A DNA stretch of 64,000 bases from the NCBI RefSeq assembly GCF_000315625.1, contig NW_005434668.1, forward strand, positions 1,034,981 to 1,098,980. Direction: 5' to 3'. The DNA comes from Guillardia theta CCMP2712. Lineage: Eukaryota > Protista > Cryptophyta. Numbering within the stretch: position 1 is the first letter of the stretch; every line of letters begins with the position of its first letter. Shown in pieces: positions 54,931 through 60,902 of the stretch. Under the pieces are notes generated by a model, which saw nothing but the letters and a program-made list of their open reading frames with translations, was not told the origin of the DNA and searched no databases. Made by a program: the position numbers and the translations under genes.

Positions 54931-56145
54931 TCAGTTAGAGAAGCTCTCATGGTCTTTCAGTGCTGACTCCAACGCCTGATTGCTCTCCTGCATCGATTGT
55001 CTTAGGGATTTCTCCTCCCGATACGCCAGCCCCTCGCTCCCTGCCGCCGCTCCTCCCTTCGTCCGTGCCTTCCCCGCTGCCGCCTTCTTCGCAAGCCTCT
55101 TCACCGCAGCCTCTTTCACGTGCGCTGCGATCTTCGCCTGCGCCGAGGGCACATGTCCTCCTCTCCTCTTCGCCTGTACGGTTGTCGCGACGCCCTCAAG
55201 TTTCTTGGCAGGTCGAGGAGCAGAAGCAGCCGCCTGCTTTCCCTCCCCTTCCAGCACTGCCATGGCCTTCTTCGCCAGCATCGCTTCCTTCCAGTAGAGC
55301 GACGAGTGGTCGGCAAACGGCGACCCTTCCGAGCACAGGCTCGGCGATTTCACGCACTGCGAGCTCTTTGGGCAGAGGAAGAGAGAACAAGGGACACCTG
55401 CGGCAGCCGCTGCCTTCACCTCCTCCAGCTTGAACTCAGCAGGACCTGCGCTCGGAGCCGAGCACAAGGACGATCCCTCCGGATGATGCTCGCAGTCACA
55501 GACCTCACTCTCAGCACGGCAGTCCACAAGCTTGCGGTACACGCTCCCCGGCATCAGGAACGGGTTCCCCTCCGGGCACTCCATTGCGCTCCTGGAGCAG
55601 GATGCGCTGTACGGGCACAGGAAGCCTCCGCAGGAAGAGGGAATCTGTGCGAGCTTCTGTGGGCTAGCTGCAGTAGCGACGTTCTGGGTCTTGCCTTGGC
55701 GGATGTCGTCAGCAAGCAGCCCGACGAAGACTAGGGCACAGCACGTCGCGATGGTCAGAGCGACCTTCTCGATCCTCTTGTACTTGGGACTGAGAACTTC
55801 ATGCACCTCTCCCCCCACATGGAAGGCACCATAGCCTGCCGTCACTTCCTCCGACGTTGCCTGCGGCTGAACCTCCGGCGCCTTCCGCTCTTCGCTGATA
55901 CTCACCGCCATGGGCTCGACCGGAGCTCTCAACAAGTTGGACTGGACGCACATGTTGCTCACTTCCGCGCGGACATTGTCTCGCACGTACACGGGCTCCA
56001 CCCTGCGAGAGAGGAAGGAGTACCCCTCCTGAGACCCTCTGGCTGGTTCGGCTCGCCTTCCAAGGAGGCTGCTTCTACCCTCGCTTTCGCTGGTTAAGTA
56101 TTGATCGATCTCTTCGACCGACATGTTCAAGAAGCTTGATCGCAT
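54931..56145 (-). CDS. Intronless type II membrane orphan protein with two Cys-rich repeats
   Basis: 404-aa ORF, TM VALTIATCCALVFVGLLA; repeats CGGFLCPYSASCSRSAMECPEGNPF and CSLFLCPKSSQCVKSPSLCSEGSPF; Ala/Lys-rich coiled-coil-like tail. Confidence 0.8.
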   Translation of the reverse strand: MRSSFLNMSVEEIDQYLTSESEGRSSLLGRRAEPARGSQEGYSFLSRRVEPVYVRDNVRAEVSNMCVQSNLLRAPVEPMAVSISEERKAPEVQPQATSEEVTAGYGAFHVGGEVHEVLSPKYKRIEKVALTIATCCALVFVGLLADDIRQGKTQNVATAASPQKLAQIPSSCGGFLCPYSASCSRSAMECPEGNPFLMPGSVYRKLVDCRAESEVCDCEHHPEGSSLCSAPSAGPAEFKLEEVKAAAAAGVPCSLFLCPKSSQCVKSPSLCSEGSPFADHSSLYWKEAMLAKKAMAVLEGEGKQAAASAPRPAKKLEGVATTVQAKRRGGHVPSAQAKIAAHVKEAAVKRLAKKAAAGKARTKGGAAAGSEGLAYREEKSLRQSMQESNQALESALKDHESFSN

Positions 56146-56446: not shown

Positions 56447-56490
<44 letters not shown>

Positions 56491-57132: not shown

Positions 57133-57219
57133 GCTACATGCTTCTATTTGAAGTGCTACATGCTTCTATTTGAAGTGCTACATGCTTCTATTTGAAGTGC
57201 TACATGCTTCTATGCTACA
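57133..57219. repeat. 22-bp tandem repeat (GCTACATGCTTCTATTTGAAGT) x3.7
   Basis: Units start at 57133, 57155, 57177 and 57199 (partial). Confidence 0.95.
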
Positions 57220-57246: not shown

Positions 57247-60200
57247 TCACACACTCAGCGCGTCCTCAGACACCTCCATGATGGCATCGTGCGCTTCTAT
57301 GCAGCGATGGAGGGCGTTGATGTAGTTGCCCAGCCTGTGGTCAACCAGAGAGTTTCTGCTGGGTCGGAACACCTTCTCCACAAAGGACGGATCGCACTTG
57401 ATGTTTCCCTTGGGGTCAATGACAACCTCCCTCCCGCCATGCATATAGAACGGAGGGCTCGGCATGGCCGAGATCATGTCGTTCCGCAGGACTGTCCGGA
57501 AGGAGCACGGCACTAGCGCGTTGTACAGCTTCGCCCATGAACGGTTTCCGACTCGCGGGGCCCCGAAGCTGTACATGGAGACTTCAGTGTCGGCCGGCAG
57601 CGTCAGCCGCAGGTCCATGGCGAGCAGCTGAGCGAAAGCGCCTCCGAGGCTATGCCCTGTCACTAGGATATGCACGCGCTCCTCCCCGCTGGTCGCCGCC
57701 GCCAGATCCTCCCGGAGCGTCTCAGCAAACGACTCGTACGCCTGCCAGAAACCGGCATGGATCTTGATCCCGTCGAGAAAGTCAAGGATAGCGTTGGCGC
57801 CGAGCTCGAGGACGTCGAAGGGAGCATGCACAGGGTGTAAGATCGACTTCTTCAGCCCTCTGAACGCTCTTGACAGGATCTCCCCGAGGTTTCGATGCGG
57901 CGTGTACCTCTCCCGCGGCACTCGCACCCGCCGCATGTCAAGATCCGTCATGGCGTTGGTGAGCGAGTTGCTGCCTCTGAAAGCGACGACGAACCTCCTC
58001 GTCCCTCCCACCGACGTGAACATCTCCTTGCAGATCAGCGCACGAGAGTCCACGTCCGGCTTGTAGACGATCTTGCAGAGCTCGAAGTCCTCCGGTATCT
58101 GCAGGCCGTAAGAGCCGTCGACTGAGATTGGGCTGGTCATGTACGCTTGCCAAGAGAAGTTGGCGGACGTCAGAGCTGTCTGCAGGCAAAAGATATCCGA
58201 GCGCTTATCTCCCTTGCCCACTTGCTCGTCTTCCTCCACACGGTACTCGTGTATCTGGTCCTGAATCTCACTGTCATGGCGTCCGATGCCGTAGATGAGG
58301 TGATACAGCCACCGGCTCCCGCCAATCTTGTCGCTGCCCTTGTGGACGGGGAGATAGATGTAGGCAACCAAGATCATGTAGACTTCGAAGAGCAAGTCGG
58401 TCGCAAATCCGTTGTAGTTCACTGTAGCTACGAGGAAGGAAGCGCCTGTCCAGAGCACGGACGCAGCGAGGGAGAAGAAGAGGTAGGGGGCCATGATGGA
58501 AGACTGCAGGACAAAGAAGCGGAACGAAAGCTGCCTGAAGCGACTCTGCAAGTAGGGCAGAGCAGACAGTCTCGCTGAGGTCCTCTGCATCAAGTTCAGG
58601 AACCATATCAGCCATACCCACCACAGGAATGCCCAGGGGATCACAGCGTAGCTGGGACAGCCGTCAGGACACACCCTCTTCCTTGAGAGAACTCACCTCC
58701 CCATCTCGCTGAGCTTGTCAAGTTTTTCGCTGGGGAGGAGAGTGTTGTTATGTACAGCAGGCAGCCAGCGCCAGGACGAAAGAGAGTAGAAGGACGATAT
58801 GTACAACTTGGCGATGGTGGCCATGGCAAACGCGATCCCATACGAGACCTTAAAGGTATAGAATCCCCATTCCTCCACGTAGTCGCTGCTGTCCCGTTGC
58901 AGCCCGTGGATCATACACAGCCAAAATGCCAGGAAAATGCCCAGAGATGCTGAATAGCAACATATAGAAAGAAATCCAACCACCTGCCAACAGGTCAGTG
59001 AGCACCCCAGGAGCAGGAGGTCGCCATCGTACCCCTCCAGCATAAAGTTTGAGCAGCAGGAAAGGATCTTGGAGCAGAATTAGTCCGAACAAACCGACGG
59101 AGATCCATCGCTGCTCTGGAAGCACACTGCCGTTTGACCGGATCACCCCCTGAGGCAGAGTCAGCGTGGTCCCTGAGTTGCGTCCAAGAGGGTACCCGAA
59201 GGATTACAATCCACAGGATGAAACAGACGATGGCCATGACCAGGAGAACGTGTCTTGACAGGATCTCGAAGAACATGAACGATCCGCCGAGGAACACGAA
59301 AGTCAACTCCATGTCTCCGTCCTCCCCGAGCACATCGCAAATCTGAAGCAGCTCTAAGAAACTACTGCTGGTCAATCATGATGACATCATTTCTTACCGG
59401 AAGATCATTGATCCTGATGTCGGACAGGTACATGTCGTACTCGTCATACAGCAAGGGTGAGCCTTGCACAAATAGATCAAGAGGTTGGCAGTGTTCTGGA
59501 GAAGTTGAACAAAGAATGGGCGATGTCATGTTCATGTTCGCAATCATGACTTGCTTTTCCGATGAGGAGTTCGTTGCAGCCGACCGGCCGATGGTTGTCA
59601 CTGAGTACTCTAGGCTACACGCACTGGTGAAAACACCGTCACACCTGGAGCAAGCAGGTCAACAACAAGCCAATAGCCTGTGAGGCACTGGCATACTGGT
59701 CAAGAAAGCTGAACATCGACGTCGCTAGCTGAGCCCGGAGGATGATGAAGGTGTTGAGAGGTTTGACACCCCTCAGTGTCCCCCCGATCTGCCTTTGCTT
59801 CTCGCTTCCACTCGTGCAGTTGAGAGCCTTGAGCTCTAGGCATATGCTGTTCCCCATGAAATCCTCGTAACATGTCTCGCTCTTTGGACTCAACGAGAAC
59901 CTGGCAGATGTTGTAAGGGGCACGACAAACATCGCTGCGTAGACCTCGGCCGGAGCCACCTGTCCTCGTAAGCTGTCAAGAGGGCAGCAACGATCATGAC
60001 CGCCCAGAGGGTCGTGATGATCGCCGTGACCTGAGATTCGAGTCTTCAGCTGCTAGGTCGGACCTCTTCACTCTTCGGCTGTACCTGACGGGGCGAAAGA
60101 ATCTCCATGAGGATTCGTGGGCCCTGCGACCATCCTGCTTTCCCCCTGTGCGATGAGTCAGAACCCTGAGAGGAGGAGCGACAAAGAACAACCTCTCCAC

Positions 60201-60356
60201 GGCAAACGCCGAGCGCAGTACCCTCCCCGACCTTGCAGAGACTCGGTACTCGAACAAGACTTCAGCTGTTCTGCAGGAGGATGTCGGCTTCAAAGATGAA
60301 GGGACGTCATGAACTTACTTATCGGTGAGGAGAGGCAGAGATCCTTCGCTGCTCAT
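57247..60356 (-). CDS. TMEM181/Wntless-like multi-pass domain fused to a C-terminal class 3 lipase
   Basis: Start MSSEGSLPLLTDK|; LPEQRWISVGLFGLILLQDPF, LPYLQSRFRQLSFRFF, VYMILVAYIYLP (TMEM181-like); VVAFRGS, IHAGF, VTGHSLGG, FGAPRVGN, NDMIS, DHRLGNY (Lipase_3 triad). Confidence 0.85.
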
Positions 60357-60435
60357 GCTCTCTATGAGCTCATGCTCTTCCCCCTCTCTTCCTCCTTCCT
60401 CCTTCCGATCTCCTCATTTCCGATCTCGGCCTGCT

Positions 60436-60700
60436 GTCTATCAGTCTATCAGTCTATCAGTCTATCAGTCTATCAGTCTATCAGTCTATCAGTCTATCAG
60501 TCTGTCAGTCTATCAGTCTATCAGTCTATCAGTCTATCAGTCTATCAGTCTATCAGTCTATCAGTCTATCAGTCTATCAGTCTATCAGTCTATCAGTCTA
60601 TCAGTCTATCAGTCTATCAGTCTATCAGTCTATCAGTCTATCAGTCTATCAGTCTATCAGTCTATCAGTCTATCAGTCTATCAGTCTATCAGTCTATCAG
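60436..60700. repeat. (TCTATCAG)n octamer tandem array, about 33 copies
   Basis: Near-perfect array with a single TCTGTCAG variant near 60501. Confidence 0.98.
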
Positions 60701-60902
60701 TTTGTACATCTTTCTTTCTTTCTGTCTGTCTGCTCATCCTCCTCATCTTCACCTCCTGCCATTGCAACTCCTACCGCAACCCCCTCATCCCCCCACTGAA
60801 GGCCGGGCCGGGCCGGCAGCCGGGCCAGCCGGGCCCGGCATTCAGCCCCCCTCATCCCCTCACTTTTCCACCGCCGCCACCTTCCCATTCGGGAAAGCGA
60901 AC

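What the first reader, a model, noticed from the sequence alone, without database searches (positions are those of the whole stretch)
57247..60356. Wntless/TMEM181-like membrane domain fused to an active-looking class 3 lipase
Seen: the last TM segments and the lipase lie in one uninterrupted ORF (57247-58674), so the fusion is not a splicing artefact, and the Ser-Asp-His triad motifs are intact. Established: animal Wntless carries acylated Wnt, while TMEM181 function is unknown. Inference: in an alga with no expected Wnt pathway, the domain may present lipid or acylated substrate to the tethered lipase, hinting at an ancestral lipid-handling role for the family.
Basis: partly seen in the sequence, partly recalled or inferred. 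Interest (0 to 1): 0.7.

Follow-up and report, generated by a model that had tools for sequence, protein, structure and literature searches.

The report
TMEM181/Wntless-like membrane protein fused to lipase
A cryptophyte alga expresses one spliced gene that joins a Wntless/TMEM181-type membrane module to an intact-looking class 3 lipase, and the same uncharacterised fusion occurs in many distant eukaryotes, which ties this poorly understood receptor family to lipid hydrolysis.

Summary
Window 57247-60356 (minus strand) is one 10-exon gene. Transcript contigs from two runs remove all nine GT..AG introns and give an 889-aa open frame. The order is a cytosolic N-terminus, TM1, a Cys-rich and sequon-bearing luminal domain of about 170 aa, seven TM helices, a linker, and a class 3 lipase (Pfam 101 bits) with Ser756/Asp813/His860 in place.

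The window's own exons reach only sub-threshold scores for WLS-like_TM (PF06664), because the domain is split across exons. Relatives pass clearly: the Hanusia orthologue at 36 bits, a 40%-identical relative at 64 bits, and a full-length fusion at 92 bits. The folded relative matches human WLS best in the PDB (E 6e-11). In the ESM Atlas it matches TMEM181 best (TM 0.69/0.76).

The fusion is not special to this alga. Of the 150 best TM-domain relatives, 118 carry the lipase. Named members come from red algae, oomycetes, chlorarachniophytes, Amoebozoa, CRuMs and a holozoan. No paper describing it was found.

With seven helices after the luminal domain, the lipase is cytosolic. The cavity of solved WLS and TMEM87A opens to the luminal side.

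I read it as a cytosol-facing, membrane-bound lipase on a TMEM181-type scaffold. It is a new variant of a known kind.

The parts
60319..60356 (-). Exon 1, coding part, with ATG at 60356-60354. The 5' UTR runs at least to about 60439, where the transcript contigs stop at a microsatellite.
   Evidence: Joints and contig pieces; splice sites; frame.
60193..60270 (-). Exon 2, part of the cytosolic N-terminal region.
60085..60145 (-). Exon 3, part of the cytosolic N-terminal region.
59945..60030 (-). Exon 4. It carries TM1 (aa 60-78, 59974-60030), the extra first helix that lies before the luminal domain, as in WLS.
   Evidence: Hydropathy 2.26; it maps onto helix 6-34 of the folded relative P0139.
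59286..59952 (-). Luminal GOLD-like beta-sandwich region, aa 86-257, on exons 4-7 with introns inside. It has 8 Cys and 3 N-x-S/T sequons.
   Evidence: Counts. The relative P0139 folds this region as a beta-sandwich, strands 46-211. No Pfam GOLD family was detected by sequence.
58342..59285 (-). Seven-helix WLS-like_TM (PF06664-type) domain, aa 258-525, on exons 7-10 with introns at 59150-59195, 58984-59032 and 58652-58696.
   Evidence: Exon 8 scores 12.7 bits (profile 41-66) and exon 9 scores 18.7 bits (profile 71-136). The orthologue P0263 scores 36.1 bits, P0139 64 bits and P0192 91.7 bits.
57247..58651 (-). Exon 10. It carries TM6-TM8, a linker of about 115 aa, the lipase domain and the stop codon (57247-57249).
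   Evidence: ORF; acceptor site; 90% identity to the Hanusia phi protein P0001.
57457..57990 (-). Class 3 lipase domain (Pfam Lipase_3 match).
   Evidence: PF01764, E 7e-29, 101 bits, ORF residues 229-406. PDB fungal lipases match at E 1e-15.
57649..57651 (-). Codon of Ser756, the nucleophile in the GHSLGG elbow.
57478..57480 (-). Codon of Asp813, the catalytic acid.
   Evidence: Aligns with the Asp of Thermomyces lipase. Kept in 46 of 47 family rows. Coordinates.
57337..57339 (-). Codon of His860, the putative catalytic base, in the S-x3-H-x4-Y motif.
   Evidence: Kept in 42 of 47 family rows. Coordinates. The assignment as catalytic is by position in the fold family and is an inference.
57133..57213 (.). 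Tandem repeat of 22 bp, 3.7 copies, in the 3' UTR. The transcript contigs end inside it (57184 and 57203).

Best explanation
Shown: this is one expressed gene for an 889-aa membrane protein. Its N-terminal 525 residues form a TMEM181/Wntless-type GOST module: TM1, a luminal GOLD-like beta-sandwich, and seven TM helices. Its C-terminal part is a class 3 lipase with a complete Ser-Asp-His triad. It belongs to an old, widespread and uncharacterised eukaryotic family in which the two parts are almost always joined. Inferred: the lipase lies on the cytosolic face and acts there as a serine acyl-hydrolase on glycerolipids of the cytosolic leaflet, in the manner of 4TM-anchored sn-1 diacylglycerol lipases or PLA1-type class 3 enzymes. 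The GOST module does not feed it substrate through its luminal cavity. Instead it places the enzyme in the Golgi/endosome/plasma-membrane system, where other GOST proteins reside. It may also offer a conserved cytosolic face (cytosolic ends of TM5, TM6, TM7 and TM8) that holds, and perhaps gates, the lipase.
For: One spliced mRNA. Lipase family and triad. WLS-like_TM membership of orthologue and relatives: 42 of 53 TM-domain rows hit PF06664 (best E 1.2e-26), P0139 64 bits, P0263 36.1 bits, P0192 91.7 bits next to Lipase_3 at 94.9 bits. A local alignment of the spliced model to P0139 gives 40% identity over aa 52-590, E 1.6e-119. The fold of P0139 (pLDDT 82, pTM 0.83) matches human WLS first (7kc4_B, E 6.4e-11, about 540 columns), then TMEM87A. 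In the ESM Atlas it matches TMEM181 clusters first (TM 0.69/0.76, 435 residues). Family breadth: 545 representative clusters at E<=1e-3 and 225 at <=1e-10; 118 of the top 150 carry the lipase. Two apparently lipase-less members have a Lipase_3 gene and 202 nt downstream on the same strand. Named members come from Porphyra, Gracilaria, Pythium, Bremia, Chlorarachnion, Amorphochlora, Phalansterium, Diphylleia, probably Corallochytrium (my reading of the 'Clim' tag) and Hanusia. Cytosolic lipase: there are seven helices after the luminal domain in both models, and the Cys and sequon content mark the loop as luminal. All five near-invariant TM-domain positions (K300, L376, R385, R392, P445 of P0192) lie at the cytosolic ends of TM5-TM8. 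The full-length model has pTM 0.78 for 882 residues, which hints at a defined domain arrangement.
Against: No enzymatic, localisation or topology data exist for any member. The window's own exons do not reach the PF06664 cut-off one by one, and the joined protein was not scanned. Family profiles find no WLS chain in the PDB by sequence, even at E 10, so the link to WLS proper rests on the Pfam model and on fold. Coordinates and PAE of the models could not be inspected, so docking of the lipase on the cytosolic face is inferred only from pTM and conservation. The TM8-lipase linker has low pLDDT (about 48-51). I could not check whether the conserved cytosolic motifs are also present in lipase-less animal TMEM181. 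If they are, they say nothing about coupling to the lipase.
Confidence: 0.5

Rival explanations
1. Receptor-enzyme 'bigram'. Binding of a ligand or cargo to the luminal or extracellular GOLD domain and 7TM cavity changes the 7TM conformation and switches the cytosolic lipase on. This would release a lipid messenger such as a free fatty acid, monoacylglycerol or lysolipid, by analogy with the 7TM-PIPK and other 7TM-enzyme fusions of oomycetes and other protists.
For: The layout is the same as in GPCR-bigrams: an N-terminal 7TM and a C-terminal catalytic domain acting in phospholipid signalling (PMC6033456; GPCR-PIPK in PMC12716839). Near-invariant residues sit on the cytosolic face next to the enzyme. 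The fusion is kept across very distant lineages.
Against: No GOST protein has been shown to signal (PMC12716839; PMC9711517). No ligand is known. Lipase is not among the accessory domains listed for bigrams. Nothing tested here separates regulation from simple anchoring.
Confidence: 0.25
2. The WLS-like cavity binds a lipid or an acylated molecule and hands it to the tethered lipase for hydrolysis.
For: WLS holds the palmitoleate hairpin of Wnt in its 7TM cavity, and phospholipid density is seen in the cavities of WLS and TMEM87A (PMC9711517). The covalent linkage with a lipase is nearly universal in this family.
Against: In the solved GOST structures the cavity opens to the luminal side and outer leaflet and is sealed to the cytosol. 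Here seven helices put the lipase on the cytosolic side. No path between the two could be examined.
Confidence: 0.1
3. The lipase domain is a catalytically dead scaffold, or the enzyme is an esterase or acyltransferase unrelated to membrane lipids.
For: Class 3 lipase folds include feruloyl esterases (PDB hits). No activity data exist.
Against: The nucleophile elbow, the Asp, the His and the H-x-G-F region are kept in 42-46 of 47 family rows. A dead domain would not be expected to keep them across such distant lineages.
Confidence: 0.08
4. Gene-model artefact: two neighbouring genes, a membrane protein and a lipase, wrongly read as one.
For: The Hanusia phi transcript 62182 is annotated as two ORFs that break at the position of intron 9. 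Metagenomic gene callers also split relatives into two products.
Against: TM6-TM8 and the lipase share one exon. Spliced contigs in two runs join all ten exons in frame. Many full-length single-ORF relatives exist.
Confidence: 0.02

Closest known systems
TMEM181 (animal GOST protein; Pfam PF06664 WLS-like_TM with PF21885 TMEM181_GOLD)
   Same: It is the best structural neighbour of the folded relative: TM 0.69/0.76 over 435 residues, rmsd 4.1. It shares the same Pfam TM family and the same order of TM1, luminal beta-sandwich and 7TM.
   Different: TMEM181 clusters carry no lipase domain. The luminal domain here is not recognised by PF21885. Orthology was not tested because no TMEM181 sequences were in hand. 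TMEM181's own function is unknown beyond a role in sensitivity to a bacterial toxin (PMC9711517).
Wntless (WLS/GPR177/MIG-14), the Wnt secretion chaperone
   Same: The four best PDB fold matches are human WLS (E 6e-11 to 8e-10, prob 1.00, about 540 aligned columns). Both have the extra TM1 before the GOLD domain, and both fall in the same Pfam TM family.
   Different: Family profiles give no sequence match to WLS chains. TM-scores are only about 0.5, with rmsd of 8-10 A. No Wnt cargo is expected in these protists. WLS has no enzymatic tail.
sn-1 diacylglycerol lipases (DAGL alpha/beta): a 4TM anchor plus a cytosolic Lipase_3 domain (from my own knowledge)
   Same: Both are membrane-embedded proteins whose class 3 lipase domain follows the last TM helix on the cytosolic side. 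This is the closest known model for how the enzyme part would work.
   Different: The anchor here has eight helices and a luminal GOLD-like domain, and it belongs to PF06664. It is not the 4TM DAGL N-terminus. Sequence relation of the two lipase domains was not tested.
GPCR-bigrams (7TM fused to PIPK, adenylyl cyclase, PDE, INPP or kinase) of oomycetes and other protists
   Same: An N-terminal 7TM module and a C-terminal catalytic domain tied to phospholipid metabolism, present in oomycetes among others.
   Different: The 7TM here is of the GOST/WLS type with a GOLD domain and an extra TM1. A lipase partner is not listed in that literature.
Fungal class 3 triacylglycerol lipases (Thermomyces, Rhizomucor, Rhizopus)
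   Same: They are the best solved sequence relatives of the catalytic domain (E 1e-15 to 1e-10), with the Ser elbow and the Asp aligned.
   Different: They are secreted, soluble enzymes of about 270 aa. Identity is low, and the alignment covers only about 130 residues of the core.

Membership tests
Pfam Lipase_3 (PF01764), class 3 lipases | Profile match above the gathering score | tested here: met
   101 bits against a cut-off of 22, E 7e-29, profile 1-137 of 140, on the window's own last exon.
Pfam Lipase_3 (PF01764), class 3 lipases | Ser in a G-x-S-x-G elbow, plus Asp and His of the triad | tested here: met
   Ser756 and Asp813 align with the catalytic Ser and Asp of Thermomyces lipase. 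His860 lies in a column kept in 42 of 47 family rows. Catalysis itself was not tested.
Pfam WLS-like_TM (PF06664) | Profile match above the gathering score (28.3 bits) on the window's own protein | tested here: inconclusive
   Only exon pieces could be scanned by reference. Exon 9 scores 18.7 bits (profile 71-136) and exon 8 scores 12.7 bits (profile 41-66); the two are colinear, and each is below the cut-off. The TM6-TM8 piece gave no hit. The joined protein was not scanned.
Pfam WLS-like_TM (PF06664) | Profile match above the gathering score on the orthologue and on relatives | tested here: met
   Hanusia P0263 (69% identical to aa 1-421): 36.1 bits. P0139 (40% identical over aa 52-590): 64 bits, profile 7-246. 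P0192: 91.7 bits. P0209 and P0298: 43-44 bits. 42 of 53 family rows match.
GOST proteins (GOLD-domain seven-TM helix proteins; Hoel et al. 2022) | A luminal beta-sandwich (GOLD) domain directly before a 7TM bundle, with fold similarity to solved members | tested here: met
   Shown for the relative P0139: strands 46-211, then seven helices; the PDB hits at E<=0.001 are WLS x4 and TMEM87A x4, followed by one adhesion GPCR (CD97). For the window's protein this is inferred through the 40% alignment and matching hydropathy, Cys and sequon pattern.
Wntless proper (Wnt chaperone) | Recognisable sequence relation to WLS, and a Wnt cargo in the organism | tested here: not met
   Profiles A1 and A2 find no WLS chain in the PDB at E<=10. 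The presence of Wnt genes was not searched. The protein is therefore filed as WLS-like, not as WLS.
TMEM181 | TMEM181_GOLD (PF21885) luminal domain, and orthology to animal TMEM181 | tested here: inconclusive
   TMEM181 is the best Atlas fold neighbour. PF21885 was not detected in any of the 53 rows at E<=0.01. No tree with TMEM181 sequences could be built.
sn-1 diacylglycerol lipase (DAGL) family | A four-helix N-terminal anchor before the Lipase_3 domain | tested here: not met
   There are eight helices plus a luminal domain. It works like a DAGL in layout only.
GPCR-bigrams | An N-terminal 7TM with a C-terminal catalytic domain | tested here: met
   The architecture is met. Whether the 7TM senses a ligand or couples to anything cannot be tested with these tools.

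The most novel reading that the evidence does not exclude
The lipase fusion is the ancestral state of the PF06664 (TMEM181/Wntless) branch of GOST proteins. In this reading, animal TMEM181 and perhaps WLS arose from a lipase-bearing protein by loss of the enzyme. The acyl-binding 7TM module of the Wnt chaperone would then be a leftover of an ancient lipid-processing machine, and TMEM181 in animals would still work with a separate class 3 lipase (a Rosetta-stone prediction).
Probability: 0.15. Interest if true: 0.8.

Novelty: new variant of a known kind. Interest (0 to 1): 0.5.

Why it matters
GOST proteins (WLS, TMEM181, TMEM87, GPR107/108/180, TMEM145) are an old receptor-like family, and only WLS has a clear function. 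TMEM181 has essentially none. A fusion of the TMEM181/WLS-type module to a lipase with a conserved triad, kept from red algae to a holozoan, gives a concrete and testable functional link between this module and glycerolipid hydrolysis at a membrane. It adds a lipase to the list of 7TM-enzyme 'bigrams'. It offers experimentally tractable hosts such as oomycetes and Corallochytrium. It also raises the question of whether the animal proteins lost the enzyme. For this window alone, it turns a raw stretch into a precise gene model supported by RNA.

Tried and rejected
1. The PF06664 scan of the whole genome in six frames missed this locus and gave only a 16-bit chance-level hit elsewhere. It is too insensitive for a domain split over exons.
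2. tblastn of distant relatives against the window could not place the upstream exons. RNA contigs did.
3. A word search with P0007 returned only the query itself. A search with P0002 did not return the alga's own 889-aa protein. The first search could not see it because of its length limit. The public annotation of this gene was therefore never seen.
4. Sequence profiles of the TM domain against PDB chains gave no WLS hit. The link needed Pfam and fold comparison.
5. One script call was lost.
6. One literature query was badly formed and gave nothing useful.
7. Raw RNA reads of X22 were too few (6 reads) to show strand or ends.
8. A red-algal (endosymbiont) origin of the gene was considered. 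In a quick tree (SH-aLRT only, long branches, midpoint root) the alga's protein falls outside the well-supported red-algal clade. I treat this as weak evidence and make no claim of origin.
9. Paralogues were looked for. The family profile found only this locus in the genome, which is a lower bound.
10. A two-gene artefact was rejected.
Full report
WHAT IS THERE. The stretch 57247-60356 lies in a eukaryotic genome of 87.1 Mb in 669 contigs. Its closest public transcript comes from the cryptophyte Hanusia phi, at 90% protein identity, so the organism is a Guillardia-like cryptophyte. That naming is my inference. The gene is on the minus strand. It carries a class 3 lipase domain: PF01764, E 7e-29, 101 bits against a cut-off of 22.

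GENE MODEL. I stayed clear of the long microsatellite upstream. Contigs of about 2.8 kb from two runs (X1 and X3, different studies) cover the whole stretch and skip nine pieces of 44-55 nt. The DNA run X15 keeps these pieces. Every skipped piece is GT..AG on the minus strand. The exons, in plus-strand coordinates, are 60319-60356 (coding part), 60193-60270, 60085-60145, 59945-60030, 59697-59900, 59398-59644, 59196-59342, 59033-59149, 58697-58983 and 57247-58651. Joined inside a script, they give 2670 nt with one terminal stop, which is 889 aa. The last exon begins at 58651, not at the ORF's first codon.

A note on method. It was built only inside scripts from the window file, for translation and for local alignment to proteins already fetched. 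All database searches used exon pieces by reference or relatives' protein ids. The joined-sequence Pfam scan and fold are left out and are named under next steps.

ANATOMY. The protein starts with 56-59 cytosolic residues. TM1 follows (aa 60-78). Next comes a loop of about 170 aa with 8 Cys and 3 N-x-S/T sequons. Seven hydrophobic helices follow (aa 258-525), then a linker of about 115 aa, then the lipase. The nucleophile Ser756 sits in a GHSLGG elbow. Ser756 and Asp813 align with the catalytic Ser and Asp of Thermomyces lipase. His860 lies in the family motif S-x3-H-x4-Y. The three columns are kept in 44, 46 and 42 of 47 family rows. The H-x-G-F and F-R-G-T/S motifs are also nearly invariant.

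IS THE N-TERMINAL PART WLS/TMEM181-LIKE? On the window's own exons the Pfam WLS-like_TM model (PF06664) gives only sub-threshold matches. They are colinear: exon 8 scores 12.7 bits on profile 41-66, and exon 9 scores 18.7 bits on profile 71-136, against a cut-off of 28.3. Relatives settle the question.
- The Hanusia protein P0263 is 69% identical to aa 1-421. It comes from the same transcript as the lipase half P0001 (records 62182 .1 and .2). It scores 36.1 bits.
- P0139 is 40% identical over aa 52-590 (E 1.6e-119). It scores 64 bits over the whole profile.
- P0192 is a full-length fusion of 882 aa, 31% identical. It carries WLS-like_TM at 91.7 bits and Lipase_3 at 94.9 bits in one chain.
- 42 of 53 family TM-domain rows hit PF06664, with a best E of 1.2e-26.

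I folded P0139 with the family alignment (pLDDT 82, pTM 0.83). The model shows one helix, a beta-sandwich (strands 46-211) and seven helices. Foldseek against the PDB puts four human WLS entries first (E 6.4e-11 to 7.9e-10, prob 1.00, about 540 columns, TM about 0.5), followed by four TMEM87A entries. In the ESM Atlas the best shapes are two TMEM181 clusters (TM 0.69/0.76 and 0.58/0.62), followed by GPR107. Family sequence profiles do not reach WLS chains in the PDB. The module is therefore a GOST-type domain of the PF06664 branch. By fold it is nearer to TMEM181 than to WLS, and it is not a Wntless orthologue.

HOW COMMON IS THE FUSION? A profile of the TM domain alone was searched against 1.84 billion cluster representatives. 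It found 545 proteins at E<=1e-3 and 225 at E<=1e-10. Of the 150 listed, 118 have a lipase domain after the TM domain, as judged by a local HMM built from the family's lipase parts. Most of the rest are short fragments. I checked two longer 'lipase-less' members on their contigs. Both are followed on the same strand by a separate Lipase_3 gene call, 72 and 202 nt downstream. That is the signature of an intron split by a prokaryote-style gene caller.

Named members come from these lineages:
- Red algae: Porphyra, with several paralogues, and Gracilaria.
- Oomycetes: Pythium and Bremia.
- Chlorarachniophytes: Chlorarachnion and Amorphochlora.
- Amoebozoa: Phalansterium.
- CRuMs: Diphylleia.
- A record tagged 'Clim', which I read as the holozoan Corallochytrium.

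The Diphylleia and 'Clim' proteins carry both Pfam domains above threshold. An ESM Atlas cluster of 53 mostly oomycete proteins is already annotated with Lipase_3 (100% of members) and WLS-like_TM (23%). Within this alga's genome, only this locus matched the family profile, which is a lower bound. In a quick tree the alga's protein falls outside a well-supported red-algal clade. That tree is provisional.

HOW IT LIKELY WORKS. Seven helices between the luminal domain and the lipase put the enzyme on the cytosolic side. This is the topology of WLS, where both ends are cytosolic (PMC9711517). In solved WLS and TMEM87A the 7TM cavity opens to the luminal side and to the outer leaflet and is closed towards the cytosol.

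The layout most resembles membrane-anchored cytosolic class 3 lipases of the diacylglycerol-lipase type (my knowledge), and more generally the 7TM-enzyme 'bigrams' of protists. Five TM-domain positions are kept in at least 90% of rows: K300, L376, R385, R392 and P445 of P0192. All five lie at the cytosolic ends of TM5, TM6, TM7 and TM8 in the model. The full-length model has pTM 0.78 over 882 residues, even though the linker has low confidence. Both observations hint that the lipase sits against a conserved cytosolic face. I could not inspect coordinates or PAE, and I could not check whether animal TMEM181 shares those motifs. This step is an inference.

My best reading is a cytosol-facing glycerolipid hydrolase. 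It is held, placed in the Golgi/endosome/plasma-membrane system, and possibly gated by a TMEM181-type GOST scaffold. Ligand-regulated signalling is the main rival.

KNOWN OR NEW? I found no paper that joins WLS-like or TMEM181 domains with a lipase. This covered searches on TMEM181, Wntless, GOST, PF06664, GPCR-bigrams and class 3 lipase. The library holds only open-access papers and preprints. The GOST literature lists TMEM181 as uncharacterised. One survey did not find WLS or what it calls 'GPR181' in choanoflagellates. I rate it a new variant of a known kind, of moderate interest.

LIMITS. There are no biochemical data. The window's own protein was tested only in pieces. The alga's public annotation was not seen. 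The RNA status of runs X1 and X3 is a guess by the tool, although contigs that lack all nine introns can hardly be anything but mRNA, given the intron-bearing DNA run and the single genomic locus. The transcript ends are not defined, because the contigs stop in repeats on both sides.

Noticed in passing
window 60436-60701: A perfect octamer microsatellite (GTCTATCA, 33 copies, 99% matches) lies directly upstream of the gene's 5' UTR. The transcript contigs stop at its edge, so the true transcription start is unknown.
   Followed up: partly
window 57133-57213: A 22-bp tandem repeat (3.7 perfect copies) starts 34 nt after the stop codon in the 3' UTR. The RNA contigs of both runs end inside it.
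   Followed up: partly
window 56448-56490: A hexamer repeat (CTCCTG, 7 copies) lies in the spacer between this gene and the next minus-strand ORF.
   Followed up: no
window 58680 (inside intron 9, 58652-58696): The DNA run X15 carries one extra C after 58680 relative to the window. This is an indel polymorphism or assembly difference confined to the intron.
   Followed up: no
P0263 and P0001 (Hanusia phi transcript 62182, ORFs .1 and .2): The orthologous Hanusia transcript is annotated as two ORFs. They break exactly where intron 9 lies in this window. The second ORF starts with 8 residues unrelated to the window, which looks like a retained intron in the assembled transcript.
   Followed up: partly
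window 60362-60373 (minus strand): A three-codon upstream ORF (ATG, two codons, TAG), in another frame, lies 17 nt before the main ATG in the 5' UTR.
   Followed up: no
window 54931-56145 (minus strand): The neighbouring downstream ORF of 404 aa is Cys-rich, has one hydrophobic segment, and gives no Pfam match at E<=0.01.
   Followed up: partly
L004/L005 6503-7552 and L006 7103-7999: On metagenomic contigs of relatives, gene callers split the fusion into a TM protein and a separate Lipase_3 product 72-202 nt apart. Database counts of 'lipase-less' members of this family are therefore inflated.
   Followed up: yes
P0121, P0122 versus P0123: Full-length relatives P0121 and P0122 show no PF06664 hit in hmmscan. 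A fragment of the same protein type (P0123) passes at 35 bits. The Pfam model therefore misses some true members, probably through HMMER's filters or bias correction.
   Followed up: no
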